Part shown: positions 1 through 64,000 of the stretch, piece after piece
Position numbering within the stretch: the first letter of the stretch is position 1
How the letters are laid out: each line of letters opens with the position of its first letter
DNA from: Selaginella moellendorffii
Lineage: Eukaryota; Plantae; Lycopodiophyta
Length of the DNA stretch: 64,000 nucleotides
Assembly: GCF_000143415.4 (NCBI RefSeq)
Contig: NW_003314261.1
Span: 620,001 to 684,000, forward strand
Reading direction: 5' to 3'
Position numbers and translations under genes: made by a program
Notes under the pieces: model-generated
The model's database searches: none
Seen by the model: only the letters and a program-made list of their open reading frames with translations
What the model was told of the DNA's origin: nothing

Positions 1-631
1 CTCTTGCCTTTTCTGCTTGTGGTTGGCAGAAACTACTCACATTCATTCCAAGATAAGAGAAAACAAATCGATTTATATTATATAGAAAATACTTCTTTTT
101 TTTGTAAAGATTAAGTTCCCCAAAGGCAGATTGTTTTGTTCTAGGGTCGGCCCTTGCATCTCTATCCACCCATTCTCGAGCTTGAATAACTGTACGGCCA
201 TATCACAACTCACTTTTCATGATAGTCACAGGTTCACTGGTTGAGATGGAAATGGATTTTGTGCTACTTTAGATTTTATACTTAGACTTAGCAAGCATTA
301 CTAAACATGGATCTGTCTTCACTATGCAAAATTTCATTGAATAGAGATGTTATATTTAAGGAGGTGTGCGGCAGTTTACTAGTGATTTATAAAGTACAAA
401 AGAAAGGGAAGCTTGATTTACCTTTGTCTCGTGTTTAATGTAAAACTACACCTATATTATTTATTCAGGTCTCTCTTTCTTTTCTCTACAAACGGGGCAA
501 GATTGTTGCAGATACAACAATACGAGGAGAGCCTCGAGAAGTTGATGGATGAATACTCTTGAGAACCTAGACAAGTTTTATCGACAAACTTAAAAAGAAA
601 TTATACTAAAACAAAGAGCCACTCTATCTAG

Positions 632-2206
632 CTATTTATCAAATGCTAACAGTTTCTCGTCTTCTTCGTGTGACAGGCGCCTCCTCTTTGACGGGTCAGG
701 CTCAACGTAATGATTTCCTCCGAGACAAGCCAGGGCAATCATTTGGAGCATGCTGTCAAGCATCACGACCCTGTGTATGTTCGCCCCCCCTCGAGCGCCC
801 TGCTTCAAGCTCTGCGCCATCCGAATTCCAGCGGCTTTGAGAAGGTCATACTGCGTGTACCTCAGCACCACGTCCCCTATAGCAATTCGAAGCAGCCCTT
901 CATAAAACTTTTTTGCCCCGGACGAAAAAAAGCCACCGTCAACTTCATTACTCGGAAGTGGATACCACTACACCAACGAGCAGATTATGAGCCGTGTCAA
1001 GTAAAGCCTCCTCACCTCTGGAGCAATGTACAAGTCTCCCACGATGAACGGCCGCTTCAAGTATTTTGCACCCGATTTCTCCCGGTAGTTTTCACGCAGA
1101 AACTTGGTCCCAAGAGCAAACATCCTGTCAATGACAGCCTTTGAAGTTGGAGCCTGTCCTGATGGTCGAGTCGTCTCCACAAAATCTGTAACCAAAAGAC
1201 GCGGGTAAGAATTCGGAACATGAAAAACGAAAAAACACAACGAAACCCGAATACGCGCTGTCCGAGACTTTGTTACCACCCGCCAATATTTGACCTTCAG
1301 CTTTCAGAATTGCATACGTGAACTTGTGCTTGGAGAGGGCCAACAAGTACACTGCATGAAAAGAAAAAAAATGAATGAAAACATGAAAAAAAAAAGTACT
1401 TGGTTTGTAGTGTCTGTTCGACAAGTTGCACCTGACTTCAGGGCGAGCACAAGCTGCAGCCTGGGCAATTGCTTCCCACGTCTCGTTGGGCTTGAACTCG
1501 CTGATAAAGGCACATCGCTGTGCCGACAGGCGAAGCCGTTCCACCTCACACTCTGTTCGCTTGCGAGGCCCTTCATTGAACACAAACGCTCTCCCGTCGG
1601 TCCGGCCAGTATCTGCCACATCGTAAGGACCCTGAGGAGGTGCTTCCGTGTCGAGATGACTTCCGTCCGAGCTTGAGCTGTCGCTTCCCGATGCGTTACT
1701 GTCCTCGTGCAAGATGGCTTCAACTTCCTCCAAGGCATCGTTCTCCCCGGAAAGGAGAATGACAAAGCCCTTCTGATCCAGTTCATCTTCGTCACCATCT
1801 GCAATGGACTCTAGAAAAGAGGAATTGTACTCTGCATCAGTTGGCGTGGTGAATTTTTCAACCTGACGAATCAATTCCAAATGCCTGGGTCGGAAGTTGA
1901 GCTCTGTGATGCGTTCGTTGTACGATCTGCACAGGTCAAGGTTAACCTGGGGGTTGCGAGCAGGGATGAAAGAACTCACCTCTCGAAATCTGCCATGGAT
2001 GCGCTGATCAGGTGAAGGCAGGCATCGAGCGCATCCGCGTTCATCTTCCCGCCCTTGAACCTGTCGAAGGGGAGCTGAGAAACAGCCGCCTGGTGGCGGT
2101 GGATATTCAGGAACGGCTCCACAGCCTGGAGCACCCCAAAGTTGAACTCGCTCGGCGGAAAACGAAAAGGATCCGTCACCCCCCACACATGCTTCCTCGC
2201 CGCCAT
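632..2206 (-). CDS. Uncharacterised 5-exon protein (~454 aa) with PD-(D/E)XK nuclease-like motif and C-terminal NLS
   Basis: Manual GT-AG splicing (exons 2206-1980, 1926-1400, 1351-1247, 1185-1016, 967-632; 1365 nt) gives a stop-free frame MAARKHVWG...GRTDGRAF...FISEFKP...AIAQAAAC...PSKRRRL...FDK*. It is colinear with the pseudogene at 57097-58502 and shares three intron positions with it. Telo-box AAACCCTA lies just upstream. Confidence 0.7.
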
Positions 2207-5200
2207 CTCTTCGCCTCGCACAAACCCTAGGAAATTGATTTATTTATTAAAGCGTAGACACAGAATTGACTTGCACAAGCCTCAACTCGCCATCTTCATT
2301 CAGCTCGTTCAATTTTGTCCATGTGTTAGATGATGTCCTTCACGCCACGCTGGATTCCTGTTGTTTTTATTTGATTTTTATTTCTTTTTAAATTTTATGA
2401 AGAGTGCTTGCCTGACTTCAGTGCAGCAGTTTTCTGCGGAGATTCTTACTTGAAAAACGATGCCAGGACCAAGCAATTCTAGCCGTACTTGTGATTCCAT
2501 ACAAGAAGTGGCTGTACATAGAATGACAACATTGTGGAGCGCTAAACTAGACTAATTCTGTTAAGCATTATTCTAAAATTAGAATATAGTATACTTTTCA
2601 ATAATATAGATTTTAATATAGATAATGTTATGGCATACTAAATGTACAGAACTAGAATAGAATATCATTTTTTATGTGGAGCGCTATTATAAAACTGAAA
2701 TAAAATATAAATTAATATAGATGCCATATAATCCTCTTAAGCACTAGCAGGGTGCAATAGCTAGGCCTCTAGTAGCATGGCTGGCATGGCCGGGCTTCCA
2801 GCATTGTGGCTGCCATGGCTGCCTATGCATGCTCAACCACCTTATGGCTAGGTTAAGTTGTGCATTGCAAGATCAAAAAAAAATTCATCCACAAGAGTGA
2901 CTCAACAATAGTCTCTTTTAAAGGCTTTCATTTTATTTCTTTAGCAAGGAGTGAACATGCTATAAACTTTAGAAGCGGTAGTGTTCCTTGACTATTATTA
3001 TTTCCTTTCCAGCCATTAATCCCATTATGTTCTCTATTTAGTATATGATCAAGACACTTTAGCATAGATTACTATTACGAAGATAATGTTCACACTTTGT
3101 GAAAAATGCACCAACTTAAATGAATTATAAAGTAATCTCTCTTTGTAATGCAAAATGCATTAACTCTTAAACACCATTTGGTTGTAGGAAATAATTAACA
3201 AAGTTAACCACCCTTGCTACTTTAGGTGTCACCTTGGTTTTACAAAAATGATATGCATTGTTTACAAGTGATATATAGAAAGAAGATAAAGGCCCTAGTT
3301 TAGATAGACTAGAGTTGTTTACATGAACATACCTCTTTGAATAAAAAATAGGAATATTGAAAGAGAGGTGGGTTATATAACTAATCTATAATAATAATTA
3401 AATATTTCACTAGCTAAAGTTAATTTTCCTGTACTAAGATCAATATAATAAACAATATCAAAGTCATAGACAAAAATATCTTAGAGATACTAAATTATCA
3501 ATTAACAAATCTAAACATCTTAAGAAGCATACTAAGTAACTTACAAAAGATAATTGTAGCATAGATAATTTTCACCTTTTACCCTATAAGATTAATAGGG
3601 AATTTAAACCCTTGGACATGTGGGCCAAGAATAATGAAGTAGAACCTAAGTTTCAAGGCTTGAGCCACTGAATAAAGGGATATTGCCAAACTCCCTAGTT
3701 TATAGTTATGAATGATTAATACTCAGCTAAAACTAAAAAGAAAGACTATTATATGGATTTATATAGTATACAAACTTAATAAAGTGGCTTGCTTATTAAG
3801 CTAATCGGCCATTGGCAACTATTGGGTTGAATCAAGTTATATGCAATAATTTTATAGCCCGATCACTATCATCTACATGGAAATACATATTCTTTAGAAC
3901 ATATAGTGCCCATCCCACATGGCTCAAAACATGTACTATATGGCAAAATAGAGTCAAGTTTCCTTGCAAAACCCACCATTCTCCCTGCAAGATCATCAGT
4001 TGTGCAATGGATCTTGCAACAACTTTAGCACTAGATCCTAGCTGAAATTTGAGTGATCTATAAGAAATCCAAGCCAAGAGCCCTACAAATCTAGAGAACT
4101 ATGTTATGATGCCTTCAATTTGTCAGCCCTTTGCTGCTGCATTGTAGATGCTTAGAGGAAATCCACAACCATAAAAAAAATGTAAGGCACACAAGTCGCA
4201 AGCAAAAGAACACAAAACCCTAAACCTAGGAACAATGAGGTGCCATGTATACTACCTTAATAAGCTTGCCATATACAGTTCACGAGCACAGGCTTCTGTC
4301 CTGCTAAAACACACTTGCTGGGCTAATTATTCTAAATTAGCCATAATAATAAAGCTATCTCAACCATAAATAATAAAGCTAGACATCACTATAATTGGCC
4401 AAAGTGTAAGCCTAAGAATAAATCAAAATTACAGAATACATAAGGGTCATCTTTCTAAAAAATGCAACACCCACTTTTCCACTAACTCTAGAAATTGTCT
4501 TAGCCCTAAAAACTTAATATCTCTTTTAGGTTAACAAATTATTTATTAAAGTCCAAGAGTCAACTCCACCCCTTCACTAGTTTGCAATGGTTGGGAAAAT
4601 AGAATAAGTTTTGAACAATAGATAAACCATAAGATTTGTGATAAAATTCCCATCCAAGAGAACAGTGACTCAGTTTTAATGTAAAACTTAACCAACTTCC
4701 AATTCTCATAGCCCAATATAATGCAGAAGTGTTTAAAACATGCTTATAATTAGATAACAATATATAGGAACATAAATAAATATGGATTAAATGATTATTC
4801 AAATCTGATTGAGCAATAATAGGCCTATCAACTAATCTACATCATAAAAGAACTAATAGTTATAAATGACCAACACCCAATTGAAACTAAAAAATGAAAA
4901 CCATTATATGGATTTATATAGGTATACAACCTCCTAAAGAACAAGATTATAGTAAGAGTATTAATATGTCAACCATAAACAATTAAGTTGGACATCACCA
5001 TATGCAACCAAGGTGTGCCACCAAGACAAAGTCAAATTAATGAGAGCATAGAACATATTTAGAGTGTAAACCAAATGCAAGGTGCAATCTACCATCAAAC
5101 ACAACACTACAAAATATACAAAAGTCATATTTTTAGAAAAGTGCAATAACTATTTTTTTTACTAACTCTAAACTCTATCTAACTCAACTCCAACACTAGT

Positions 5201-7199
5201 TTAAAATATCTTGAAAAAAATTAGAATGATTTTCAAATAAAATGATCAATAAATCCAAGATAATTTGTGGAAAAATTCCATCCAAGAGAACATTAACTCT
5301 TAGTTCAAGAATGCAAGGCTTAACAACCTTACTCCTACTTACAACTTCTGCCAAGATCTTCTAGACACATGAAAAGTTTCCTCACTTAGCATCTTGAGAA
5401 AAAGAGAAAGAAAAAAGTGAAACCATTTAGACCATATGTCTTTAAATTTCTCAAAGTTTTAGGTGTTGACAAACCAGATATCAATTGCCCAGATGTGCCT
5501 CTTCATCTGCATTAGTGTAGGTCACATGCATGATTATGAGAACTTACTGCAGCCTCCTGGTTGGGCTCCTCAATGGATACTCATCCTCCTGATTACTTGG
5601 CTCCAACTCTCTACCTTATCATATAGGGGCAAAGATCCACCTTTGGAAGAGCCCGAGCATGCACCCTGAATTGCTCTAAATTGAGGGAACTTTGGATTGC
5701 GGATGATGTGATCATCTTATCCAAGCATCACACTAAGTTGCTACTGCTGTTCCATCTGCTTGTGCCATCTCGTTTTGGTTTTCTGGGGCAAATTGGCACA
5801 TAGAAGGCACTCTGTGGATAAATAAATCACAGTGTGTGCCTAACACCTGATATTTGTGCGAGGGTGGACTACTGAGTTCTCACTTGCAAGTGTGCCCTAA
5901 ACACGTGTTAAATTCCTGTCTCACCTTAATAAGCACACAAGCTATCTCATCGGCTCAGCAAACATTAGGAAATTTCTTACCTACCAAGCCTTGTTAGATG
6001 ATGATTAGTCTGTAACCTTTTAGATAAATTAATGATTAACACTAAATGGACCTTTTAGATGTATGGTTAACGAAATAAGTTCGGTGGTCGTGAAGACAAA
6101 AAAACAAGAGGGCTTTCAAGCTCATGGCCCAGCAAGTGAGGGAGCAAAAATTGTAGGGAGCCTCACAACCTTCTAGTGCCAAATTGCCAATCTTACCGCT
6201 TTTAGGGCACGGCCATGCAAACCCTGAGTGGCAAGATAGTGCCCACATCGCCCCACGGAAAAGAAAAGCCAAAGCTTCCAGCAGCGATGGAGGAGCCAGC
6301 ATGGACAAGATGAGAGCCGGGCAGGGTTCTGTGTGGCGAATTCGCTGGGGAATCATCTCAAACGTGGCAACTGGATTAAGTTCTTGGTGGAGATATGCAA
6401 AACAATTTCTAGGGGCAACTTGAAGAGCTTGGTGTTTGTGCAACACAAGTTGGCAGAGATTTGGAGCTTACACAAGTTAAGTAGCAGAGATGGAAAAGAC
6501 AACTTCTGGGGTCAACCTCAAAAGATTGATGACACCTTTATTGACATTGTCGAGATGCTGCGAGTTTGCTAAGGAGATAACGACTTAAACCGCAGGTTAA
6601 GGAAATGAAATTTAAACTATGACGAGCATTGGAATGGAAAACCATATTGTAATTTGTATTCCATTTTTAGAATAATGCTTGACAGAATCATGTGTTAACT
6701 TCAGTAAAAACTCATAATATGCTTCAGAAAATCCTATATTATATATAGATTCATTTCTAGTTTCAAAAAACATGTTAGATGGTTGAAAACATTCACACTA
6801 TATGTTTTTTCTGAGAGCTAAGTGAATAAAAAAAATCATGTATGGAATGAAAACCATATTCACGGAGCGCTGTTATAAACTTGGGGGATGCAACTGAAAG
6901 AGAAACCGCTGACACCAACAAGTGGGAGGGCTAAGGATCGGGAATAGTGTGGGATATGGATTTACAGGAGCTTACGAGCAACTTCAGGAATCAGCGGGGA
7001 ACACAGGCTCGAGTGGTACCAATGGGGTTCCTCGCAGTCACCATATATATAAAATTATTATATTGCGGGATAAAAAATTATTGGAACAATCTGATCTTTT
7101 TCAGGTGATCTTTGTATGCTTTCTTAGTCTGATAAACCATAAACTTGAAAGCTTTTCAGGTGAAAGATTTTCTGGAACAAAGGGTGCAAGAACTTGAAA

Positions 7200-41504: not shown

Positions 41505-43640
41505 CTAGTCCAGCTCTTCGAGTTCCTCAAGTTCTTGGCACTTGGCTTTGAGTTTTCCCAGTTCCTGGCGCTTAGCTCTGAGATCAGCGAGCATCTGCGA
41601 GCTGGAAGAAGTCGCGGGAATCTTGTAAATCTTGCACACAGCCTGGAGTCGTCTCTGGTTATCCTGGATATCTTCGAGCTCTTCTAACACGTCGAGGAAA
41701 TCTCCCTCGTAGACCAGCTTGCGCTCACACATCCCGATCTTCTCTTCTGTGAGTAGCATCTCCAGACCATTGTCGTGATCCTGTGCGAGCTCGACACAGC
41801 CCAAGACATCCTCCCAAGTTTCCGGCCGATCCAAATCCACAGCAGCAACACCCTCCAAGTTCCTGGGCTCGAGCAGCGAGAGATAAGCACTGCCTTGCAC
41901 TGGAACAGCCATCTTACACTGCACAACTCCTGAGAAGAAGAAAAGACTAAGATCTTCTCTCAAACTCTAGCAAAGCTCACCTTGCATGGCTTTGTGAGAA
42001 ACCTTTCCAGATACTTGGTATGGCTGAAACTGGAAGCTCGAGAAAGCGTCCGGAGACACGAGAAACAAGAGTACTATGGTGTCCTCCTCAGTGTAGCTGC
42101 GATCGTACTCGTGCCTCCAACTTCGCAGGGCCTGCATTGCCTTTGCCAGATGCTCCACTGCCGGTTTGCGATCGCGACAAACTGTGGCAACTCCCAGCGT
42201 TCGTGGCAACCACACGAAGCCAAGTCCTGTGCTGTTCTTTCCCAGTGGTCTCCATAGGAACTTTGCTGCATCCATGCCTTGAAGAACGCAAAAAGTTTTG
42301 TAGAATCATAGCGAGAAGAAACAAAGAGCGTTATACCAGCTCCGAGCAATGCATCCTCGAGATCTCCTTCGTAGTAACGCAGCAAGAGAGGCTCCACCAC
42401 CTCGGGAGCACCATCGCAGCGTTCACAGCGAAACCTCGTGGACGTAACTTTCGCTTGTACACACTTGGTATGGTACCAGCCGAGACAAGCCCCGCATTGA
42501 ATCCTTCCGGTGGCACGCTCCACAGCAAGCTGAATCGCTCTGCAAGCACGACCAAGTGAGAAGAAGTCCAGCCAAGATCACAAGAACTTCCGCCGGCAAG
42601 GCCATGATGTTGCGCTGGAGAGCCTGGCGGAGCACGTACTGCTCGAAGACGAAGCCCCGCAAGCTCGCGTACTCCTTGAACATCCGAGTAGCCTCAAGAA
42701 ACCTTCCGAGCTTCCCCACGTTCGTAGCGCTACACAGGTACTGCGCAAACATGCTCGCCACCTTGTCCGAGCAAAACGTATACTGGAACCGGCTGAAAGA
42801 TCCGGGCCTCAACACGAAATGGAATAGCCTCCACGATACGTTCTGCGAACTTCCATGGTTTTCCAAGATGGCTGCCACATTCTTGAGCTTCGTGCTCGAA
42901 AGGCACTTGGTAACATCCGAAGCAAAGTCCTCCTCGGTGAGAGTTTCAACCTCGTGATCCCAGAGAAGCCGAGGGACGCCTCCAAACCACTCGAACGCTA
43001 AGTTGGCGGCGGCCACTCTTTGGTACGCGTGAGCTGCTCTCGCGGACGGGCTCCCATCCGGTAGCCGGGGCATCGAATCGGCCCTCCTCTTCCAGCTTTC
43101 CACGAGAGCATCAAACTCTCTCTTGTTCCAAACCGGGAGATAGCGAGTGTAAGTCATGCGGAGCTTCCTCGCGATCTTTGTGTTGCTCTCGTCTGGAGAG
43201 CCCGCAAGGAGTGCTCGAGCGCCGAGCGTCCTGCCGGACGAAATCTTCTGATCGATCAGATGGTAGTCGACACTGGGCGATTCGATGAGGTGGAGAGGAT
43301 AGTCTTGCTTGGCGATGTGCTTGAGAGAGCGGCCTCGAAACTCCCAGATGAAAGTCTCGGACTCGTACAGGATGAGCGAGCCCGGCTTGTCGATGCCCGT
43401 CCTGATGATGAAGTACCACAGGAAGGCCGATTTGCCCACGCCGGAGTTGCCATTCAAGAGGCACAGAGAGCAGTCCTCGATCGCCAGCGTTTCTACGATA
43501 TCCTGGTAGAGCGCATTGAAAACCTCCCGAACATAGAGCGCATCCATCCTCTTGTGCAAAGAAACCACGTCCGGCAGCGCCAGAAATCTCCCAGCCGCGT
43601 AGGAATCACGGCCTCCAAAGCACGCGCGCGCCCCCACCAT
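41505..43640 (-). CDS. Crinkler/RHS-type P-loop NTPase + PHD-like finger + degenerate REase-like domain + SAP-like/coiled-coil tail (4 predicted exons)
   Basis: LYVR, Walker A GNSGVGKS, YHLID, LAGSP, YLPVW..RE, FGGVPR, LRGFVFEQY; IQCGACLGWYHTKC...CERC; WRPLGKN...LFLVSPDAF..F.FQPY...VVQ. Predicted introns 42530-42587, 42278-42336 and 41930-41980 join the ORFs in frame. Confidence 0.75.
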
Positions 43641-54899: not shown

Positions 54900-55080
54900 A
54901 GAGACCCCAGAAGTAATATAACGGTCGTGGTGAGATCACGATTACGACACAGTTGCTGGGGTCCAATCCGACCACCGTTAGTTCTAAGCATCTGGGTCAT
55001 CGCAAAACGGCATTTCCTCACGTGGGCAGTGATCACTCCCTCGAATTCCACGCTCGATCCAATCGATCTCGGCAATCTCT

Positions 55081-56883
55081 CTAGCTCCAGATTGATACCA
55101 TGTTGGCGATGAGCAGCGCATACGCTGCAGCGTTCTCGCCATCCAGTTCCAAAACCTCGTGAGCTGCGCGAATTCCTAGCTCCCCGCCCTGGAGCTGGAG
55201 CTGGAACTTACACGCAGCGAGGACGCACATCCAGTCGAGAGAATCTGGCGCGAAGGGCATGTCCAGCACAAGTTCCATGGAGTCTCTCACGCATCCGGCC
55301 CGCCCAAGTGCGTCCACGACGCAGGTGAAGTGCTGCTTCTTGGGCTCCAGGAAGAAATCCTCGCGCATCGACGCAAAGCAGCGCCGGCACGCCTCCAGTT
55401 CCCCGCCGTGAGTGAATGCCAGCAGCGCCTGGACGAAGCACGACTCGTCCGCCTCCTCGAAGACCACCTTGAAAAGATTGAATTGGTCGACAAAATCTCC
55501 AGCGGTGGGAGTCCTGGCATCGTTCCTCGCGAAAGTGTTGTGCGAATGGGCGGCAAGCACGGCAGACCAAGACAGTACGGACTGTTCCGGGCTGGCGTTC
55601 AAGGTTTTCATGGCCTCACACGCAAGACCGCATTGTCCGTACGCGAGGATCATGGCCGTCCAGGTCACGTCGCTCTTGTCCGGCATTGCACGAAAGAGTT
55701 CCTCTGCTTCCAGCAGATGCCCTGTAGCGGCAAATGCTGCTAGCATGCAGTTTAACGTTGCAAGGTTCCACTCAGGCATTTTGTCAAAGAATTCTTTTGC
55801 TAGACCAATGTGTTGAGACACGCAGTAGCCAGTAAGCATAGAAGTTAAAGTTATAATGTTCTTTTGTGGCATTGATTTGAGCAAGTTGGCGCACTCTTCC
55901 GGATACGAGCCTTGGGCAAGCCCGTCCAAGAGCGTATTCCATGAAACTAGATCCCAGTAGGGCATTTCCTTCAAAAATAGCTTCTTGGCCTCGTCAACTC
56001 GACTGTTTTGAGCAAATGCCGAGAGCATCGTGTTCAAGGACACAATGTTCCAAACCGGCATCGTTTCATAAAAGAAAAGTCGGGCACATTCTACACGGCC
56101 AGCCTTGGAGAACGCTGCAAGCATGGAATTCATTGATACCAAGTTGTGCTCCTGCATAACGTCAAAGAAGATCCGTTTCGCATCTTCCACAAACCCACAC
56201 TGGGCATACAAAGACAGAATCGTAGTCCAGGAAAACAGATCATGCTCTGGCATAGAAAGGAATGTCTCGTTACATTTCTCAAGCTTTTGTGCCTCGGCAA
56301 AAGCCAGCAAAAGGCTGTTCCAAGACACTAGATTCCTCTCGGGCATGGTATCAAAGATTCCTTTTGCACTTCCAAAATCTCTTTCTTGGGCGTATGCATC
56401 TAGCATTGCGTTCCAAGAGACAGTATCTCTTTCCGGCATAGACGAAAAGATATTCTTAACCAGGGAAATATTCCCAGTGATGCATAGGAGAGCCGTCCAG
56501 GCAAACAGATTCCTCTGTGGCATAGAATCAAAGGCTTCTACCGCAAGACCTATATGTCCGTTCTGGGCATATGCCGTCACTAGAGAAGTCCATGACAAGA
56601 GATCTTTCGAGGGTATTTGATCAAAAAGAGACTTCAACTCATCAATCTTTTTCGATCTCCCATAAGCTGCAAGAACTGTGTTATAAGAGACGGTGTCTCG
56701 TCGGGGCATGGAATAAAACATGAGTATCGCATCTGCTAGATGCCCTGTTCGGGAATATGCTGAGAGAAGTGTGTTCCACGCGATGATCGTCTTCTCCGGC
56801 AATGTGTCGAAGATTTGCTTTGCTCGATGGAGACTCCCGGATCGCGAATAGTCTCGGAGCAAAAGAAAGGAATCTTGGAGCAT
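55081..56883 (-). CDS. PLS-class PPR protein with E-type C-terminus, no DYW
   Basis: Intronless; ~31-aa repeats (F.SMP.R..VSWN.ML.AY); HFTCVVDALGRAG; AAAYALL. Confidence 0.92.
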   Translation of the reverse strand: MLQDSFLLLRDYSRSGSLHRAKQIFDTLPEKTIIAWNTLLSAYSRTGHLADAILMFYSMPRRDTVSYNTVLAAYGRSKKIDELKSLFDQIPSKDLLSWTSLVTAYAQNGHIGLAVEAFDSMPQRNLFAWTALLCITGNISLVKNIFSSMPERDTVSWNAMLDAYAQERDFGSAKGIFDTMPERNLVSWNSLLLAFAEAQKLEKCNETFLSMPEHDLFSWTTILSLYAQCGFVEDAKRIFFDVMQEHNLVSMNSMLAAFSKAGRVECARLFFYETMPVWNIVSLNTMLSAFAQNSRVDEAKKLFLKEMPYWDLVSWNTLLDGLAQGSYPEECANLLKSMPQKNIITLTSMLTGYCVSQHIGLAKEFFDKMPEWNLATLNCMLAAFAATGHLLEAEELFRAMPDKSDVTWTAMILAYGQCGLACEAMKTLNASPEQSVLSWSAVLAAHSHNTFARNDARTPTAGDFVDQFNLFKVVFEEADESCFVQALLAFTHGGELEACRRCFASMREDFFLEPKKQHFTCVVDALGRAGCVRDSMELVLDMPFAPDSLDWMCVLAACKFQLQLQGGELGIRAAHEVLELDGENAAAYALLIANMVSIWS

Positions 56884-56928
56884 CAAAAGGTTAACAAAAA
56901 GAGCGGAATGTTTTCAACAAAACAGTAT

Positions 56929-57001
56929 TGGAAATGGGAGGTATCGATCCTCCTACCCCCTACTTGCAACGTAGATACTCTACCAATTGAGCTACATTCC
57001 C
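56929..57001 (-). tRNA. tRNA-Ala(TGC)-like gene, 73 nt
   Basis: GGGAATGTAGCTCAATTGGTAGAGTATCTACGTTGCAAGTAGGGGGTAGGAGGATCGATACCTCCCATTTCCA folds as a full cloverleaf with G3:U70, A73 and T-loop ATCGATA. TATA-like element ~30 nt upstream, T4/T5 tracts downstream. G32 is atypical. Confidence 0.8.
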
Positions 57002-57096
57002 TAATCGTTAACATTAATTTAATGGCCCAATATAATGATATAATGACGTATTTGTTTATCCAAATTTTTTAGGGTTTGGATTTGTGATTTTAGGGT

Positions 57097-58502
57097 TTGG
57101 AATTGAGATGGCGCAGCGTGCTCTTCCCGCCCAATCAGTACACGAGGAAATTCCTCGAGATCAACCAGCCCCTGGTCACATTCGTCCCTAAGGCACCATC
57201 CACGGACAAGGTGCGAAGCAGGAGAATGCCCAACGAGGTTTTGCAGCACGCGATGAAGAGAGCCCTTCTCCGCCACTTCATTACTTCCAGCCGGTAAGCA
57301 CGCATTCCATGTTTCACTTATAGTCTCATTCTCTGCACAGAGTAGCCAAGTCTTGCACTAAGTTATTATTGATGGCCTTTTGGTATCTCACCAAGCCATC
57401 AGCATTATCGGAAAATTACAGACATGGCTTGGAAGTCAACGCTAGCTTTGTGGAAACTGAAGACAAAGGAAATGACCACTCAGCTCAAGAAGCTGAGGTC
57501 ATCGAACTGAAAGCTGGTTACAAAGAGGAAGACATGAAAGTGGAAACTGCATCAGAGGTATGATCCATCTCAAGTCTTGCAATTTTCTCAGTTATGATTT
57601 CCTAGATCAAAGAAAGAGACGATGACGACGAAGCTGATACATCCGAAGCAGAGTCTCTCGATGGAACTGATCAGGGATCAAGAGAAAGGATCTCCTTGTC
57701 AAAGTATTTGATCCTCGGGTGTTCAAGCTTGGAGACTTCGACGACCCCTGGGTCACGGTTTTGGCAATTGGAGAAACGAAAACGCTGGAGAAGGATGCGA
57801 TCTATCAAGCTCTGGCCTACGCTTGCAAGGAAGGACTTGTTAATCTCCACAAGGAACGCGTGGCTCCGATCTTTGTCATGCAATGGGCTTTCAATCGTTG
57901 AAGTTACGCCGTGCTTGACATATACGGATCGGTCAGTCTTCTGGGAGTTGCGATCACCGATGAGTCCTACGAAGGTACTCCACGTTTTAAGTTTTCATTC
58001 TCCGGTTTTCACCGTATTTCTGGCCTTGTGATGCAGATTTCAAGAAACAGCAGAAGAGCCGATAGATGCACCTGCACAGGAAAGGTGACGTCGAGCTACG
58101 GTTTTCCAAAGACGATCTTCAAAAGAAGCTAAGTTGCGGGTGGGATCTTATGCGCAAAAACTGCAGCTCATATCCGGAAATCGACTACCCGGATGGTCGG
58201 TATCTTGTTGCTGAGGTTTTTATCGAGAAACGAGTAAGATAGCTTTCGGGCTTCCAGTCGGTTGTCTGTCTTGACCATTTGTTTTTTCTTAGAACTTCTG
58301 TCTACCATCCCTGAACGTCGCCATACACACGAATGTTGGTGTTTTGAAGCTGTTTGAGGCACTCATGAAGATTGTGATCGGAGATGAGTGTTTGAAGTGG
58401 AGTGTTGAGGATGTTGAGCGAGATGTGGCGTGCAGGGAAGAGTACCATGGTCGGATTATGGGTGCTCTTGTGGATCCACCTCCAAAGCGTCAGAAACTCT
58501 AG
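57097..58502 (+). pseudogene. Decayed paralogue of the 632-2206 PD-(D/E)XK-like gene
   Basis: FPPNQY..., KVFDPRVF...IGETKT...AIYQALAYA, ITDESYE|DF, LFEALMKIVIGD, DPPPKRQKL*. Shares three intron positions with 632-2206; internal stops (57899, ~58063) and frameshifts. Confidence 0.75.
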
Positions 58503-58691
58503 CAGGATTAGTTATGACAACTGCAAGGATCGTACATACCAACCAAATCTTCCTCATAGGATCTGGCAAAGAAACACTATGGAAGCTGGACTTTTGTGGT
58601 AGTCGCTGTGGACGAAGCCCTCTTGGATAAAAAAACCCAGCCACTAGCATTCAACACTATATCATTGATTCAATTTATCCAAGTGTGTATG

Positions 58692-58697
<6 letters not shown>

Positions 58698-58757
<60 letters not shown>
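58698..58757. repeat. (TA)n microsatellite, ~30 units
   Basis: Pure TA run seen directly. Confidence 0.98.
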
Positions 58758-58760
<3 letters not shown>

Positions 58761-58999
58761 CGGAATATTAAATGTGGGATCTAAAACATGTTTAAACATT
58801 ATATCATTTATATATATGAAAACTCAAATATTAATTGGATAGAAATAAGTAACGAAATACATTTTATTTGCATATAAAACTAAAGCACTTGTTCATGGAT
58901 CTCTTTGCATTCCAACAAGGAGCAAATGCACGAGTATATCACAAGGCTTTTTCTTACTAGGAGTGTGTGGCAAGCCAAGTGGTCACAAAAGAGCGCTAT

Positions 59000-61035
59000 G
59001 GAGTCACAACCTTTGTTTCAGGACTCAAAGGCAACTTATAGCACAAGATGCAAAAGCAAGACTTTGGCACTTGCTTAACTTTTTTGCATGATTAGAGAAG
59101 GATATGCTCTTAAAGCTTGGGATTGCCAGAGTCAGATTCGACAAGATTTATGCTGTTCTTGTCATTGATCATGCTTGCACCATCAACATGGCTTGTCCAG
59201 CTCATGTTCCAAGGGAGAAATTGACAGGTATAGTGATTGGTGGAAATGCAATAGTATCATATTCTTCTCCTCCAATAACAGCAACAGATCTTAGAAGAAC
59301 TGAGACACCTCAGGACACCTGATGTTGATCGTCCTCCATCCTTGGATGATGTTGGCAACATGTTGTTCATACTCAAACAGATTGCCACAAAAGACTATTT
59401 CTGATAGCATTCATCACACCGCCTTCCCCAACAAAAAAGGCTCCCTTCTGTCATCACTAGTGATCATCCCTCATAGCTGCCCACAACGCTCGAGCAACGG
59501 ATTTCCAATGGTTTTTCTAGAGCTACTATATGATGCTTATGTCCCCAGGCTCCACATTCTCCATTGTGCTTCCATCCTACAATACACTCCTCATAACTCA
59601 TTTGTCCAGCCCAACATTAAATACACCACAAATGCCCATTACCCCAGTGGCAACACAAACTGGTGACAAGGCCTCTAGCACCAGCTCCATCTGCGATGAT
59701 GATCTTCTTTCTATTGCAGCTGCTTTGGAGGCTACTCAGCTTGGGCTTCCTACTCCAGCAATTCTGTCACCTTTCTTGGTGATACCTCTCATCACTCACT
59801 CCCAAGGCCATGAAGGAGATCTAGAGAGTGTTGTTAGTGCAACATCTCTTTTAGAGAACCCTCTAGAGCTCTTTACAGCATACTTTGACGGTGCATGATG
59901 CCCTCTCAATCATCAAGTAGGAATTAAAGTATGGATTTTAGACCATTAAGAGAAAAAGGTGGCTCAGCTCTCTAGAACACTTCTAGCAACTTCAGCCAAT
60001 AAGATGGATTATTTGGCCATGATCTCTACCGTGGATCTTGCCTCACAACATGGAATCCACCTTGTCCACTATCTAACAACTTAGTGGCAAGTATCATGTC
60101 TGATATTTGGCAATGAGCAATTGATTTCACGTCTCTATTTTACACTATCAGCTCTGACACCAACGGTTGTTCACTCCCTATGCCAATAAAATCCTCCAAA
60201 TAAACTCTCTCATGAGGCGATTGAGACGATGCATGAGTGAACTTTGACAGCTCCTATAATAATAACCTTCTATGACATAGAGCTGCCTCTAGACATGTTT
60301 GAGACTGCCAACACATCTCCAACCCAGATGATTGTTGCAAGCAAGGCTTCCTTTTGGACAACTTAGATATCAATCTTTAAGCACCAGCCTTTGGATTGAG
60401 TATGAAAACTAACTCTTGGAGATTTTTCATTCTTTCAAGGAAGTATTTGCTTGAGACTACTCCCACCTTAGAGGCATCCCTGTGGAAGTCATTTTCACAA
60501 GATCAAGCTCTTTAATTATGTTGTCCCAGTTTGCTAACACATATGACATTTTAGCATAGCATTGTTGCCATCAATTAAGGAGGAACTCATGAAACTTCTA
60601 CAAGCAGGCTTCATCTCTTTTATCTAGTGTTTATACTAGGTTTTCAATTGTGTAAATCCAATGGCAAATTGTAGATTTGCATAGATTTTTGCAACTTCAA
60701 TGACATCACCTTTCAAGACCACTTTCCAACACCTTTTTTCAATGAGCTTCTGGATGACTTGGTTAACCATGAATACTTCTCCTTCATGGACAGCTTCAGT
60801 ACAGATCACCATTGAGCCATCAAATCACTCAAAGACATTGTCTTAGACACTATGGGACATTCTTTTTTATTCAGTCCTCCTTTACAGCGTATGCAATGCT
60901 GGCTCCACTTTCCAATGTTTCATGACATTTTCTTTTCACGACTTATTAGGAGATTCTCTGTGGGTCTACATGGATGATCTTTCCACAAGGTCACTTCTTT
61001 TGAGGAGCATTTGCAGCACTTTGAGCAGGTTTTCA
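59000..61035 (+). mobile_element. Decayed Tat-like gypsy remnant: archaeal-type RNase H followed by RT
   Basis: 59880-60070 reads YFDGA*CPLNHQVGIKVWILD...ATSANKMDYLAMISTVDLASQHGI; 60580-61030 reads EELMKLLQAGFI, ICIDF, DHFPTPFFNELLD, FSFMD, WVYMDD. Boundaries approximate. Confidence 0.7.
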
Positions 61036-61322
61036 CTTATTGTTAAGAGGCAGCCCTTGGTGACAGTAAACTTGCACTTGTCTAGGTTGAGAGTGAAGTG
61101 ATGATGTTAGGGTTTGACATCTCCAAACAAGGCAGAGTCCCTCATGTGGCAAAACACTAAAGCTTTCACCCCCAAGCAGCTGCACTATTTCATTGGGGTT
61201 GTTTAGGTGGTTTATCCAAGTTGGATTTAATTTAGAGAACAATTCTCAATAAAGATTTTATTCCTCTAGAAACCAAAATTTAATATTGTATTTCTTCCTA
61301 CCTTGCTCTTTCTAGTGTAGAA

Positions 61323-61960
61323 TAAACATTAAACTCAAAAACTGCTACTACAAAAAGGATATGCCCATGTTCTTAACTTTCTTATAAGTTACAAGAATTG
61401 TATTGTAAGAGCTGAGAGTAAAGATCTGCTAAATGCCCTGCTTGGAAATATGGAAGATCATTGTATCAAAGGTTTAGTCTCAAAAGTAAAAAATAATCAA
61501 CACCATATTTCTCAAAAGCATTCAATATATCAATTTTACTGAAAAATAACAGTGGAGATGGGAGGTATCGATCCTCCTACCTTTTACTTGGCTATACCAA
61601 TTGAGCTACATCCTCTGATTATTGAAATTAGAGGATTTTATTAGCATTTTTTTTCTTGGGCTTGGATTTTGGGCAAGATGGCTTGAAGGACGAGGTTCCT
61701 CTGCTGTGAGCGCATCTGAAGCTGTGGAAGATCGATCTGAGGTACTAGAAGATCGATCCAAGACACCGGAAGATTGAGGTGAGGCAATCGAGAGGAGATT
61801 AGCAGCCCCTGGTGACATTCATCTAGGATTCCAATCCGCTCTTCCCACCCACAGTATTGCTCAAGACCAACCTGGTGACATTCGTCCCTGAGGCGGACAA
61901 GGTGCAATGCAGGAGAAGGTTCTGCTGCACGCGATGGAGAGAGCGCTTCTCCGCTCTTGT
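61323..61960. repeat. Duplicated module B (AT-rich spacer + tRNA-Ala pseudogene + 5' fragment of nuclease-like gene)
   Basis: Direct repeat of ~62423-63010 (e.g. AAACATTAAACTCAAA, AGAGCTGAGAGTAAAGAT, GATCGATCCAAGACAC, GGACAAGGTGCAATGCAGGAGA). Confidence 0.85.
61553..61615 (-). pseudogene. tRNA-Ala pseudogene with 10-nt deletion in the anticodon arm
   Basis: GAGGATGTAGCTCAATTGGTATAGCCAAGTAAAAGGTAGGAGGATCGATACCTCCCATCTCCA; T arm intact, one mismatch in the acceptor stem. Confidence 0.8.
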
Positions 61961-61989
61961 ATTTGATAAAAAACACTAATTTTTTTTTT

Positions 61990-62365
61990 ATCTCCCATAA
62001 GCTGCAAGAACTGTGTTATAAGAGACAGTGTCTCGTTGAGGCATGGAATAAAATATGAGTAGCGCATTTGTTAGATGCCCTGTTTGGGAATATGCTGAGA
62101 GAAGTGTGATGATCGTCTTCTCCGGCAATGTGTCTCGATAGAGACTCCCGTCTCAGAGCAAAAGAAAGGAATCTTGGAGCATCAAATCAACAAAAAGAGC
62201 AGAATATTTTCAAGGCCCAAAACAGTATTTGGAGATGGGAGGTAATCATTAACATTAGTTTAATGGCCCAATATAATGATCCAAACCTTTTAGGGTTTGG
62301 ATTTTGGAGGCAATTGAGGTGGTGCCCACCCAATCAGTGCGAGATCAATTAGCCCCTGGTCACAT
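61990..62365. repeat. Duplicated module C: PPR 5' fragment + 15-nt tRNA remnant + start of nuclease-like gene (deleted copy of ~56655-57185)
   Basis: CCCATAAGCTGCAAGAACTGTGTTATAAGAGAC...AAAAGAAAGGAATCTTGGAGCATCAAA...TGGAGATGGGAGGTA...TTAATGGCCCAATATAATGAT...GCCCCTGGTCACATT shared with 56.7-57.2 kb. Confidence 0.88.
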
Positions 62366-62612
62366 TTAAATTCATATTACATTTCTATATGCATCTTCTA
62401 AGATCTTTCTGGCATGGAAAAAAAACATTAAACTCAAAGGCTTATACTGCAAAAAAGATAAACTCTCTCATAAACTACAAGAATTGTATTGGAAGAGCTG
62501 AGAGTAAAGATATATTAAATGCCCTGTTTGGAAATATAAAAAGTTATTGTGTCAACATTTTGCTTCACTTTAGTAATTTCTCAAAAGCATCAATGTTTCT
62601 AAAAAATAATAA

Positions 62613-62685
62613 TGGAGATGGGAGGTATCGATCCTCCTACCTTCTACGTGCTGTGTAAATGCTCTACCAATTGAGCTACATCCCC
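62613..62685 (-). tRNA. tRNA-Ala(AGC)-like gene with non-canonical anticodon loop (possibly pseudogene)
   Basis: GGGGATGTAGCTCAATTGGTAGAGCATTTACACAGCACGTAGAAGGTAGGAGGATCGATACCTCCCATCTCCA; all stems pair, G3:U70 present, loop ACAGCAC lacks U33; T5 downstream. Confidence 0.7.
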
Positions 62686-62838
62686 TGATTATTGGCATTA
62701 GAGGATTTCATTAGTAGTTTTTTACTTGGGCTTGGATTTTGGGTTGCGAGCGCATCTAAAGACTGTGGAACATCGACTGGAAGATCGATCCAAGACACTG
62801 GAAGATTGAGGTGAGGCAATCGAGAGGAGCATTCATCT

Positions 62839-63402
62839 ATGAGGCACCAAGTTAGTTTGGGGATTCCAATGCGCTCTTCCCGCCAATCAGTAGACGAGGA
62901 GATTGCTCGAGATCAACACGCTGCTGGTGACATTCGTCTCTGAGGCGCCATCCACGGACAAGGTGCAATGCAGGAGAGCACGCGATGGAGAGAGCGCTTC
63001 TCTGCTCTTCCTTGTGCGCATTCTATGTGGTCTTGCCCAGTTTCACTCTACGATTCTTACAGAGTAGCCAAATCTCGCGCCCACGAAAGTTCATACGAGC
63101 CGCTACACCATGCCATCATCGATGGCCTTTGGTATCTCACCAAGCCATCGGATATAGACTGAAACTCGAGGCTGGCTGAGGACGAAAGAGATGACCATTC
63201 GGATGAAAGTGGAAACTGCGTCAGAGGTATGATCCATCGCTCAAGTTTTTGCAAAGTTCTCATTGATAAGACAATGGCGACGAAGTTGATATGGAGTCTC
63301 TCGTTACTGTTAAAGTATATGATCCACGGGTGTTTGAGCTTCCCAGAGTCAACGATACCTGGGTCACGGTTTTGGTGATTGGAGAAACGAAAACGCTGTG
63401 AG
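62839..63402 (+). pseudogene. Further decayed paralogue of the PD-(D/E)XK-like gene (5' half)
   Basis: KLVWG; RVAKSRAHESSYEPLHHAIIDGLWYLTKPSDID*; KVYDPRVFEL...VLVIGETKTL*. Confidence 0.72.
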
Positions 63403-64000
63403 CAATAAGATGAACCGCCAGAAAAACCAGGCAAACCATGGTCACCGGCTATCTTGGATTCGAGATTTACAACATCGAGCCTCCAGATACCATCAAATGT
63501 TCTCTATGTCCAAAATACTCTCTTGTGATTCCTGTTCCTTGCACTTAAAATCAGGTACTGCGATTCTTCCTACCAGGTGAAAGATCTTAAATCTTTTTTG
63601 GTTGGAACTCTATCGACGAAAAACTTCTTTTCAAACTCATTTGCAGCTTGATCCTGGTAGGCTTCGAGGCCTCTTCCTGCTATCTGCGGCTTCCACCCCG
63701 AGGTAGATCGGCGATTACGATCTCGTCGAAGATGGTAAAAACGACCTCTATAAGTTTGAGGAAGAGATTTTGGAGCCCTTGACGTCGTGGCAGCTTGAAT
63801 GGATCCACATTCTTCGACTTCACATAGAGTCCATAGAGTTTGGAGTCAGCTCCCAACCCCTGGAACGCAATCACACAACTTGGATGAACAAATTGCTTAG
63901 ATATGATCTCCCACCTCGAATGCCTGCTTGACAAGAGAAACTCCGGCGTTATAGCCATCACTGTCGCCGGTGCTAGAAAACCGAAGCCCTCACCTGTGGA

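What the first reader, a model, noticed from the sequence alone, without database searches (positions are those of the whole stretch)
56655..63430. Locally amplified head-to-head module: tRNA-Ala-like gene + nuclease-like gene
Seen: four times (56929, 61553, 62230 remnant, 62613) a minus-strand tRNA-Ala-like sequence lies within ~50-200 bp of the start of a plus-strand copy of the PD-(D/E)XK-like gene. The modules alternate between two sub-types (A/C carry the PPR 5' end; B/D carry an AT-rich spacer), so the tRNA-gene pairing appears older than the latest tandem duplication and survives different flanks. Inference, three options: (i) a nuclease-encoding selfish element that carries or targets tRNA-Ala genes, (ii) a nuclease plus tRNA-like RNA (guide, decoy or substrate) system, (iii) passive tandem duplication. 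Caveats: the intact paralogue at 632-2206 has no tRNA upstream, and all right-end copies look pseudogenised.
Basis: partly seen in the sequence, partly recalled or inferred. Interest (0 to 1): 0.75.

Follow-up and report, generated by a model that had tools for sequence, protein, structure and literature searches.

The report
Decayed local duplicates carrying a tRNA gene
In this spikemoss (Selaginella moellendorffii) region, one stretch of chromosome holding the start of a PPR gene, an alanine tRNA gene and a nuclease-like gene was copied twice and then decayed, so the four "tRNA plus nuclease" pairs are leftovers of ordinary duplication, not a working or mobile unit.

Summary
The sequences are there. 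Two tRNA-Ala genes fold correctly (56929-57001 UGC; 62613-62685 AGC). There is also a decayed copy (61553-61615) and a 15-nt stub (62230-62244). All are on the minus strand, 50-200 bp from plus-strand copies of a multi-exon gene distantly related to the gene at 632-2206.

The "AT-rich spacer" of units B and D is a decayed copy of the same PPR 5' end that A and C carry. All four units therefore come from one ancestral segment: PPR 5' end, tRNA, gene.

Two events explain the layout:
- An older duplication gave the A/C and B/D lineages (about 82% identity).
- A later tandem duplication copied a 5.3-kb block, 56648-61982. Identity is 91.6% for A-C and 87.7% for B-D. A roughly 4.1-kb deletion followed in the second copy.

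No terminal repeats or other mobile-element ends were seen in the region. All four gene copies are broken. The paralogue at 632-2206 has no tRNA nearby.

Earlier scan notes describe other decaying tRNA-Ala-like clusters in this genome, beside genes those notes do not describe as nuclease-like.

The parts
55081..56886 (-). Open PPR reading frame (601 aa, likely ATG at 56883). At least its first ~360 bp (back to ~56528, much deleted) was co-duplicated in B/D, and its first ~240 bp (56648-56886) in C.
   Evidence: Pfam PPR E=4.8e-79; ORF list; alignments.
56929..57001 (-). tRNA-Ala(UGC) of unit A. It has the G3:U70 pair, U33 and A37, and a TTTT run 6 nt downstream. It sits 43 bp upstream of the PPR start on the same strand and 107 bp from the ATG of gene copy A on the other strand.
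   Evidence: ARAGORN; Rfam 55.5 bits; sequence and flanks.
57002..57108 (.). Shared divergent promoter spacer. It holds a TGGGCC-type site (57023-57029, read on the minus strand) and two TAGGGTTT telo-box-like motifs (57070-57077, 57091-57098).
   Evidence: Read directly from the sequence. A similar CTAGGGTTT lies about 30 bp before the ATG of the paralogue at 2206. Motif function is inferred from general plant promoter knowledge.
57097..58503 (+). Gene copy A, a full-length but broken member of the nuclease-like family. The ATG at 57108 is one base out of frame with the exon-1 reading frame (57097-57294). Relative to D, exon 2 has a T run one base longer (57378-57381) and a 23-nt deletion. 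There are in-frame stops TGA at 57899-57901 and TAG at 58063-58065.
   Evidence: Translations; tblastn P0003 182-282 E=1.7e-5 running through the TGA; collinear weak HMM hits; P0005 (SELMODRAFT_423202) has W at both stops; core alignment with D...ExK...QxxxY.
58690..58760 (.). (AT)n microsatellite after copy A.
   Evidence: The Rfam mir-297 hit at 38 bits (gathering 90) is a low-complexity artefact.
60675..61098 (+). Probable decayed Ty3/gypsy reverse-transcriptase fragment inside the duplicated block.
   Evidence: Piece 60675-60812 hits Ty3 RT 4ol8_A at E=0.0056 and Ty3 Gag-Pol 7q5b. The YxDD-like VYMDD motif was read by eye. Pfam finds nothing, so support is weak.
61281..61958 (.). Unit B: decayed PPR 5' scrap (about 61336-61500), tRNA relic 61553-61615(-) with a 10-nt anticodon-arm deletion, and gene exon-1 remains (about 61830-61958, +). 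It is cut off at the junction of the younger duplication.
   Evidence: (28.4 bits).
61959..61982 (.). About 24 nt of filler at the junction between the two copies of the 5.3-kb block.
   Evidence: Alignment; repeat spacing 5335.
61983..62368 (.). Unit C: PPR 5' scrap (61983-62190), 15-nt tRNA stub at 62230-62244(-), spacer with a telo-box, and the first about 45 nt of exon 1. It ends at the roughly 4.1-kb deletion.
   Evidence: A-C 91.6%.
62370..63398 (.). Unit D: decayed PPR 5' scrap (62434-62560), tRNA-Ala(AGC) 62613-62685(-) with C33 instead of U33 and a T6 terminator, and gene exons 1-3 in pieces (+). The gene is cut off just after the GETKTL stretch of the nuclease core.
   Evidence: (P0001 69-124 to 63040-63207, E=0.027).
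632..2206 (-). Intact paralogue (matching SELMODRAFT_402085, 444 aa; exon 1 identical) of the same family, with a telo-box before its ATG and no tRNA nearby.

Best explanation
This is a nested local segmental duplication in the nuclear genome of Selaginella moellendorffii.

The ancestral arrangement was a compact head-to-head gene pair with a Pol III tRNA-Ala gene in the roughly 220-bp shared spacer: a PPR gene on the minus strand and a RecB-like (PD-(D/E)XK-type) nuclease-family gene on the plus strand.

Three steps then followed:
1. An older duplication copied a segment running from inside the PPR coding region, through the tRNA, into the nuclease-like gene. This gave lineage U1 (now A and C) and lineage U2 (now B and D).
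2. A later tandem duplication copied the 5.3-kb block 56648-61982, which held U1, retrotransposon debris and the 5' part of U2. This produced the order A-B-C-D.
3. In the second copy, a roughly 4.1-kb deletion removed most of C's gene and a 60-nt deletion removed most of C's tRNA.

The tRNA rides along because it lies between the breakpoints. It is no more tied to the nuclease-like gene than to the PPR scrap on its other side.

What is shown: the homology map, the breakpoints, the divergence classes and the gene lesions. What is inferred: the order of events and that no function links the tRNA and the gene.
For: - All four units align collinearly over PPR scrap, tRNA, spacer and exon 1.
- The B and D 'spacers' match PPR coding sequence above every shuffle (z=8.7 and 4.6).
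- A-C at 91.6% and B-D at 87.7% do not differ significantly (Fisher p=0.07). Both are higher than A-D at 82.0% and A-B at 83.8%. This fits one duplication of a two-unit block.
- The repeat spacing of 5335 bp equals the block length.
- B ends exactly where C begins, while D continues into exons 2-3. That is expected if the right breakpoint fell inside U2.
- No copy of the unit occurs elsewhere in the 64 kb.
- The only inverted repeats in the 25 longest pairs shown for 55000-64000 belong to an (AT)n tract.
- All gene copies are broken.
- The paralogue at 632-2206 lacks a tRNA but shares the telo-box promoter.
- tRNA genes lying 10-3000 bp from protein genes are common enough in this species to give 49 dicistronic tRNA-mRNA transcripts involving 23 tRNA genes (PMC8166872).
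Against: - The decisive genome-wide test was not possible.
- The tRNA body is better conserved between the old lineages than most of the surrounding DNA (4/56 differences against 37/106 in the PPR scrap, p=6e-5). It also shows one compensatory pair change, 4:69 G-C to A-U. So the tRNA was kept by selection after the first duplication. This is compatible with, but does not require, a role tied to its neighbour.
- The B-D identity is somewhat lower than A-C.
Confidence: 0.85

Rival explanations
1. Selfish or mobile element: the nuclease-like gene and the tRNA-Ala form, or sit in, a mobile cassette. This could be a homing-type nuclease element, a Helitron or Pack-type capture, or a transposon that targets tRNA genes. 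On this reading the cassette inserted repeatedly here.
For: - A nuclease-fold gene next to a tRNA gene recalls tRNA-targeting elements such as Dada transposons (PMC8869645, listed).
- Retrotransposon debris lies inside the block.
Against: - No terminal inverted repeats appear among the 25 longest inverted-repeat pairs shown for the region, and no Helitron-like ends were seen on reading the unit junctions.
- The unit boundaries fall inside a PPR coding region and inside an exon or intron of the gene, and the two events use different boundaries.
- No copies occur elsewhere in the window.
- The gene is a multi-exon, host-type gene. Its promoter motif is shared with a tRNA-less paralogue.
- The tRNA does not match the known tRNA-bearing Helenus-1_SMo LTR (sequence from the PMC10886601 supplement).
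Confidence: 0.05
2. Functional two-part system: the nuclease-like protein and the divergently transcribed tRNA-Ala-like RNA work together. The RNA would serve as guide, decoy, substrate or promoter/insulator element, and the pairing would be kept by selection.
For: - The tRNA body was conserved after the older duplication, with a compensatory stem change, while the anticodon arm drifted (6/17 against 4/56 differences, p=0.008).
- The tRNA lies in the shared promoter spacer.
Against: - All four adjacent gene copies are dead, while two tRNAs remain folded. There is therefore no present co-maintenance.
- At the start-codon position B, C and D all read GTG, so the gene may already have been dead when it was copied.
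- The intact paralogue has no tRNA.
- The tRNA has its own Pol III terminator and is equally close to the PPR gene.
- In earlier scan notes, other tRNA-Ala-like clusters in this genome sit by genes those notes do not describe as nuclease-like (unchecked).
Confidence: 0.04
3. Array expansion by repeated unequal crossing-over in register, rather than one block duplication. This is still passive and differs only in mechanism.
For: Units alternate in type, and A and C begin at the same PPR position.
Against: - The B/D scrap reaches further into the PPR gene than the A/C boundary.
- The B-to-C junction joins non-homologous positions with about 24 nt of filler. This fits a non-homologous tandem duplication better than in-register recombination.
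Confidence: 0.06

Closest known systems
Tandem segmental duplications that carry tRNA genes along, such as the tandem tRNA gene units on Arabidopsis chromosome 1 (from general knowledge, not tested here)
   Same: Local head-to-tail copies of a chromosomal segment include a Pol III tRNA gene with its flanks. The copies decay by deletions and point changes.
   Different: There are only four units here, from two events. The unit also contains parts of two protein genes. Most copies are already wrecked.
tRNA genes lying very close to protein-coding genes in S. moellendorffii (dicistronic tRNA-mRNA survey, PMC8166872)
   Same: A tRNA gene lies tens to hundreds of bases from a protein gene in this compact genome. 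Here the tRNA is 43 bp upstream of the PPR start on the same strand.
   Different: No transcript data were examined here. None of the three family gene numbers searched (423202, 424098, 402085) appears in that paper's supplement. The PPR gene's own identifier is not known here and was not searched.
Helenus-1_SMo, a tRNA-bearing miniature LTR retrotransposon of S. moellendorffii (PMC10886601)
   Same: It is a tRNA-like sequence that multiplies in this genome.
   Different: The Helenus LTR is 120 bp with TG...CA ends, a GGGTTCAATCC-type T arm and 5-bp target duplications. The tRNAs here have a GGATCGATACC T arm and no such ends, and the Helenus T-arm pattern is absent from the window.
Dada DNA transposons, which insert into tRNA and snRNA genes (PMC8869645)
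   Same: An element is associated with multicopy small-RNA genes.
   Different: From general knowledge, Dada elements have a DDE transposase, defined ends and target duplications, and they split their target gene. Here the tRNAs are whole or simply deleted, and the neighbouring gene is a spliced host-type gene.
RecB-like / PD-(D/E)XK nucleases (for the protein family only)
   Same: A D ... E-x-K ... Q-x-x-x-Y motif order occurs in the predicted beta-beta-alpha core of P0003 and of the A-type copies. P0001 has C and P0004 has N at one of these positions. ESM Atlas gives weak leads to PDDEXK_12 and HSDR_N.
   Different: There is no significant Pfam or PDB sequence match. My structure model was unusable, with mean pLDDT 33. 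By these searches the family is confined to Selaginella.

Membership tests
Passive tandem/segmental duplication | Copies are collinear over everything between the breakpoints, including unrelated neighbouring sequence | tested here: met
   PPR scrap, tRNA, spacer and exon 1 align in all four units. Homology of the B and D spacers to PPR coding sequence gives z=8.7 and 4.6.
Passive tandem/segmental duplication | The two halves of a duplicated block show the same divergence | tested here: met
   A-C 91.6% against B-D 87.7%, Fisher p=0.07. Spacing of 5335 bp equals the block length.
Mobile element (DNA transposon, Helitron, homing-endonuclease element) | Defined termini such as terminal inverted repeats, with the same boundaries in each copy | tested here: not met
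   The 25 longest inverted-repeat pairs shown for 55000-64000 are all (AT)n. The boundaries of the two events differ and lie inside coding sequence. Helitron hairpins were only looked for by eye.
Mobile element (DNA transposon, Helitron, homing-endonuclease element) | Dispersed copies at unlinked sites with target-site duplications | not testable with these tools
   There are none in the 64-kb window.
tRNA-Ala gene | Cloverleaf scoring above the Rfam tRNA threshold, with an Ala anticodon | tested here: met
   A 55.5 bits (UGC) and D 52.2 bits (AGC). B at 28.4 bits and the C stub fail.
tRNA-Ala gene | G3:U70 acceptor pair, the AlaRS identity element by established knowledge | tested here: met
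   Present in A and D (sequences).
tRNA-Ala gene | Canonical anticodon loop (pyrimidine 32, U33, purine 37) | tested here: inconclusive
   A has G32, U33 and A37. D has A32, C33 and A37. D is doubtful as a decoder. The canonical Selaginella tRNA-Ala was not available for comparison.
tRNA-Ala gene | Expression and aminoacylation | not testable with these tools
   Only T4-T6 terminator runs downstream were seen.
Helenus-1_SMo LTR | Sequence match to the 120-bp LTR, including its T arm | tested here: not met
   0 matches at up to 3 mismatches. The reference sequence came from the PMC10886601 supplement.
Selaginella nuclease-like family (SELMODRAFT_402085 group) | Significant, collinear protein similarity of copy A to family members | tested here: met
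   tblastn P0003 182-282 to 57683-57970, E=1.7e-5. Five collinear weak HMM hits. Core alignment.
PD-(D/E)XK / RecB-like nucleases | Catalytic motif order D ... (D/E)xK followed by QxxxY | tested here: met
   Seen in P0003, P0005 and window copy A. P0001 has C in place of Y, and P0004 has N in place of K.
PD-(D/E)XK / RecB-like nucleases | Significant profile or structural match to a known member | tested here: inconclusive
   Pfam finds nothing. PDB sequence search finds nothing. The AF2 model has pLDDT 33. ESM Atlas gives only leads at 0.82-0.84.

The most novel reading that the evidence does not exclude
The tRNA-Ala-like genes here would belong to a genome-wide Selaginella class of alanine-tRNA-bodied RNAs. 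In that class the body (acceptor, D and T arms, G3:U70) is kept by selection while the anticodon arm drifts. Such an RNA would have been recruited into the divergent promoter of a RecB-like nuclease gene subfamily as a functional partner or as a TFIIIC-bound promoter/insulator element. The pairing would then recur at unlinked members such as the SELMODRAFT_424098 locus.
Probability: 0.04. Interest if true: 0.55.

Novelty: already known. Interest (0 to 1): 0.12.

Why it matters
It matters little beyond annotation.
- It shows that the apparent fourfold tRNA-nuclease association counts one ancestral arrangement four times.
- It gives a worked example of how a compact plant genome stacks and then erodes local duplicates.
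- It marks copies A-D of the nuclease-like family as pseudogenes.

The small residual interest is in the tRNA. Its body is conserved and shows a compensatory change, while the anticodon arm drifts. This matches other tRNA-Ala-like clusters noted in this genome.

Tried and rejected
**Genome-wide adjacency test**
- The other DNA collections hold no plant genomes, so I did not scan them.

**Looking for copies elsewhere**
- The search of earlier findings by sequence gave nothing.
- Searching the notes for 'tRNA-Ala' together with 'nuclease' found no note holding both words.

**Helenus LTR origin of the tRNA**
- Rejected.

**Confirming the nuclease fold**
- The AF2 model of P0001 from a 4-sequence alignment had pLDDT 33, so I ran no fold search.
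- Pfam and PDB sequence searches were blank.
- A profile word search added no new members.

**Closer relatives of copy A**
- An exhaustive HMMER search with the 76-aa core piece found only SELMODRAFT_423202 (99% identity) and SELMODRAFT_424098 (54%).
- It also returned two repeat-rich hits, P0006 and P0008, which I judge spurious.

**Other points**
Searches were run exon piece by exon piece, by reference.
- The Pfam check of the retrotransposon debris was blank. Only a weak Ty3 RT hit in the PDB supports it.
- The PDB hit of 60847-61098 to designer PPR proteins was not pursued.

Full report
**Source and setting.** The window is nuclear DNA of the spikemoss Selaginella moellendorffii. It holds intronless PPR genes, one with an E motif, and a SPARK receptor kinase. 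Every significant protein hit of the gene family is a SELMODRAFT entry. Earlier scan notes name the same species.

**Observation.**
- ARAGORN finds exactly two tRNA genes in the 64 kb: tRNA-Ala(UGC) at 56929-57001(-) and tRNA-Ala(AGC) at 62613-62685(-).
- Rfam confirms both, at 55.5 and 52.2 bits against a gathering score of 29.
- A third copy at 61553-61615(-) reaches 28.4 bits. It has a 10-nt deletion in the anticodon arm and changes in the acceptor and D stems.
- At 62230-62244 only the last 15 nt of the tRNA remain, after a 60-nt deletion.
- Each of the four lies 50-200 bp from a plus-strand copy of the 5' part of one gene.

**The gene.**
- Copy A (57097-58503) is a distant member of the family of the five-exon gene at 632-2206, which lies on the minus strand and matches P0001, SELMODRAFT_402085 (exon 1 identical).
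- tblastn of P0003 (residues 182-282) hits 57683-57970 at E=1.7e-5.
- A family HMM gives five weak but collinear hits along copy A.
- The core alignment shows the motif order D ... E-x-K ... Q-x-x-x-Y, which is typical of RecB-like PD-(D/E)XK nucleases by established knowledge.
- I could not confirm the fold. Pfam and PDB sequence searches are blank. The AF2 model from a 4-sequence alignment had mean pLDDT 33. The ESM Atlas gives only weak leads: PDDEXK_12 at 0.84 and HSDR_N at 0.82.
- 'Nuclease-like' therefore stands at motif level only.

**All four copies are broken.**
- In A, the ATG at 57108 is one base out of frame with the exon-1 reading frame.
- Exon 2 of A differs from D by a T run one base longer and a 23-nt deletion.
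- A has in-frame stops at 57899-57901 (TGA) and 58063-58065 (TAG).
- An exhaustive HMMER search with the 76-aa core piece found SELMODRAFT_423202 (P0005, 199 aa, 99% identical, on another scaffold). It has tryptophan at both stop positions, so it is an allele or a very recent copy. Its gene model is itself a patchwork of frames.
- The same search found SELMODRAFT_424098 (P0007, 115 aa, 54%), a fragmentary A-type member elsewhere.
- B keeps only exon 1. C keeps about 45 nt of exon 1. D keeps pieces of exons 1-3 with stops and ends just after the E-x-K stretch.
- At the start-codon position A reads ATG, but B, C and D all read GTG. The gene may already have been dead when it was copied.

**The decisive point.**
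- The multiple alignment shows that the B and D spacers are decayed copies of the same PPR 5' coding sequence, shortened by several deletions.
- Local alignments of the PPR 5' region to the B and D spacers score above all 300 dinucleotide shuffles, with z=8.7 and 4.6.
- A further 17/19 match places D 62434-62452 opposite A 56528-56546, deeper inside the PPR gene.
- All four units therefore descend from one segment: PPR 5' end, tRNA-Ala, gene. The tRNA is as tightly linked to the PPR scrap as to the nuclease-like gene. It lies 43 bp upstream of the PPR start on the same strand.

**History.**
- Pairwise identities fall into two classes: A-C 91.6% and B-D 87.7% (not significantly different, p=0.07), against A-D 82.0% and A-B 83.8%.
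- The A-C repeat spacing is 5335 bp.
- B stops exactly where C begins, with about 24 nt of filler at 61959-61982. D runs on into exons 2-3.
- This fits an older duplication that produced U1 (A/C type) and U2 (B/D type). A single non-homologous tandem duplication of the block 56648-61982 followed. That block held U1, intervening DNA and the 5' part of U2.
- In the second copy a roughly 4.1-kb deletion joins 62365 to about 62370, equivalent to A 57190 and pre-B 61281.
- The intervening DNA holds an (AT)n tract and what looks like decayed Ty3/gypsy reverse transcriptase. The hit to Ty3 RT 4ol8 is E=0.0056, the motifs were read by eye, and Pfam is blank.

**Against a mobile or functional module.**
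- The unit has no copy elsewhere in the window.
- The 25 longest inverted-repeat pairs shown for the region are all (AT)n.
- The breakpoints of the two events differ and lie inside coding sequence.
- The tRNA is not the tRNA-bearing Helenus-1_SMo LTR known from this species (PMC10886601).
- The intact paralogue at 632-2206 has a TAGGGTTT telo-box just before its ATG, as copy A does. It has no tRNA: there is no tRNA hit at E<=10 in 1-6000, and the T-arm pattern occurs only at the three right-end sites.
- tRNA genes very close to protein genes are common in this compact genome. One survey reports 49 dicistronic tRNA-mRNA transcripts from 23 tRNA genes, at listed distances of 10-2965 nt (PMC8166872).

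**The tRNAs themselves.**
- A and D differ at 10 of 73 positions. Six differences lie in the 17-nt anticodon arm and four in the remaining 56 nt (p=0.008).
- The body is far better conserved than the PPR scrap (4/56 against 37/106, p=6e-5).
- Two of the four body changes form a compensatory pair, 4:69 G-C to A-U.
- Both keep G3:U70, a T4-T6 terminator and the GC of the anticodon. D has C33 instead of the near-universal U33.
- So the tRNA body was kept by selection after the older duplication. That is what one expects of a working tRNA(-like) gene, whatever its neighbour.
- Earlier scan notes describe other small, decaying clusters of tRNA-Ala-like genes with scrambled anticodon arms in this genome, beside genes those notes do not describe as nuclease-like. 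I could not check those notes.

**Limits.**
- The verdict rests on the internal anatomy of the locus and on the one independent paralogue in the window.

**Verdict.** Confidence is about 0.85, and interest is low.

Noticed in passing
window 56929-57001 and 62613-62685 (minus strand): Between the two folded tRNA-Ala copies the anticodon arm differs at 6 of 17 positions, about the neutral rate. The rest of the tRNA differs at 4 of 56, including a compensatory 4:69 pair change. The copy at 62613 has C33 instead of U33.
   Followed up: partly
window 57070-57098 and 2215-2235: Copy A and the intact paralogue both have TAGGGTTT telo-box-like motifs about 10-40 bp before the ATG. Copy A also has a TGGGCC-type site at 57023-57029. 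This looks like a promoter signature shared by the family.
   Followed up: no
window 57899-57901 and 58063-58065: The two in-frame stops of copy A are tryptophan codons in SELMODRAFT_423202 (P0005), which lies on another scaffold. The stops may be specific to one haplotype or one very recent copy.
   Followed up: partly
window 56883-56886: The 601-aa PPR reading frame starts directly in a PPR motif, with no obvious N-terminal targeting stretch, 43 bp downstream of the tRNA on the same strand. The gene may be 5'-truncated, or the tRNA may sit in its leader.
   Followed up: no
window 60675-61098: Probable decayed Ty3/gypsy reverse-transcriptase fragment, with a weak hit to Ty3 RT 4ol8 (E=0.0056) and a VYMDD motif. 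It lies inside the duplicated block and is missed by Pfam.
   Followed up: partly
window 41505-43640 and about 14-28 kb before the window: Earlier scan notes list Crinkler/RHS-type NTPase-nuclease-like genes nearby, so this chromosome region holds several unusual nuclease-fold genes. I did not examine them.
   Followed up: no
window 63430-64000 (minus strand): An open frame of about 105 aa with no Pfam match abuts the truncated end of unit D. What cut off unit D was not identified.
   Followed up: no
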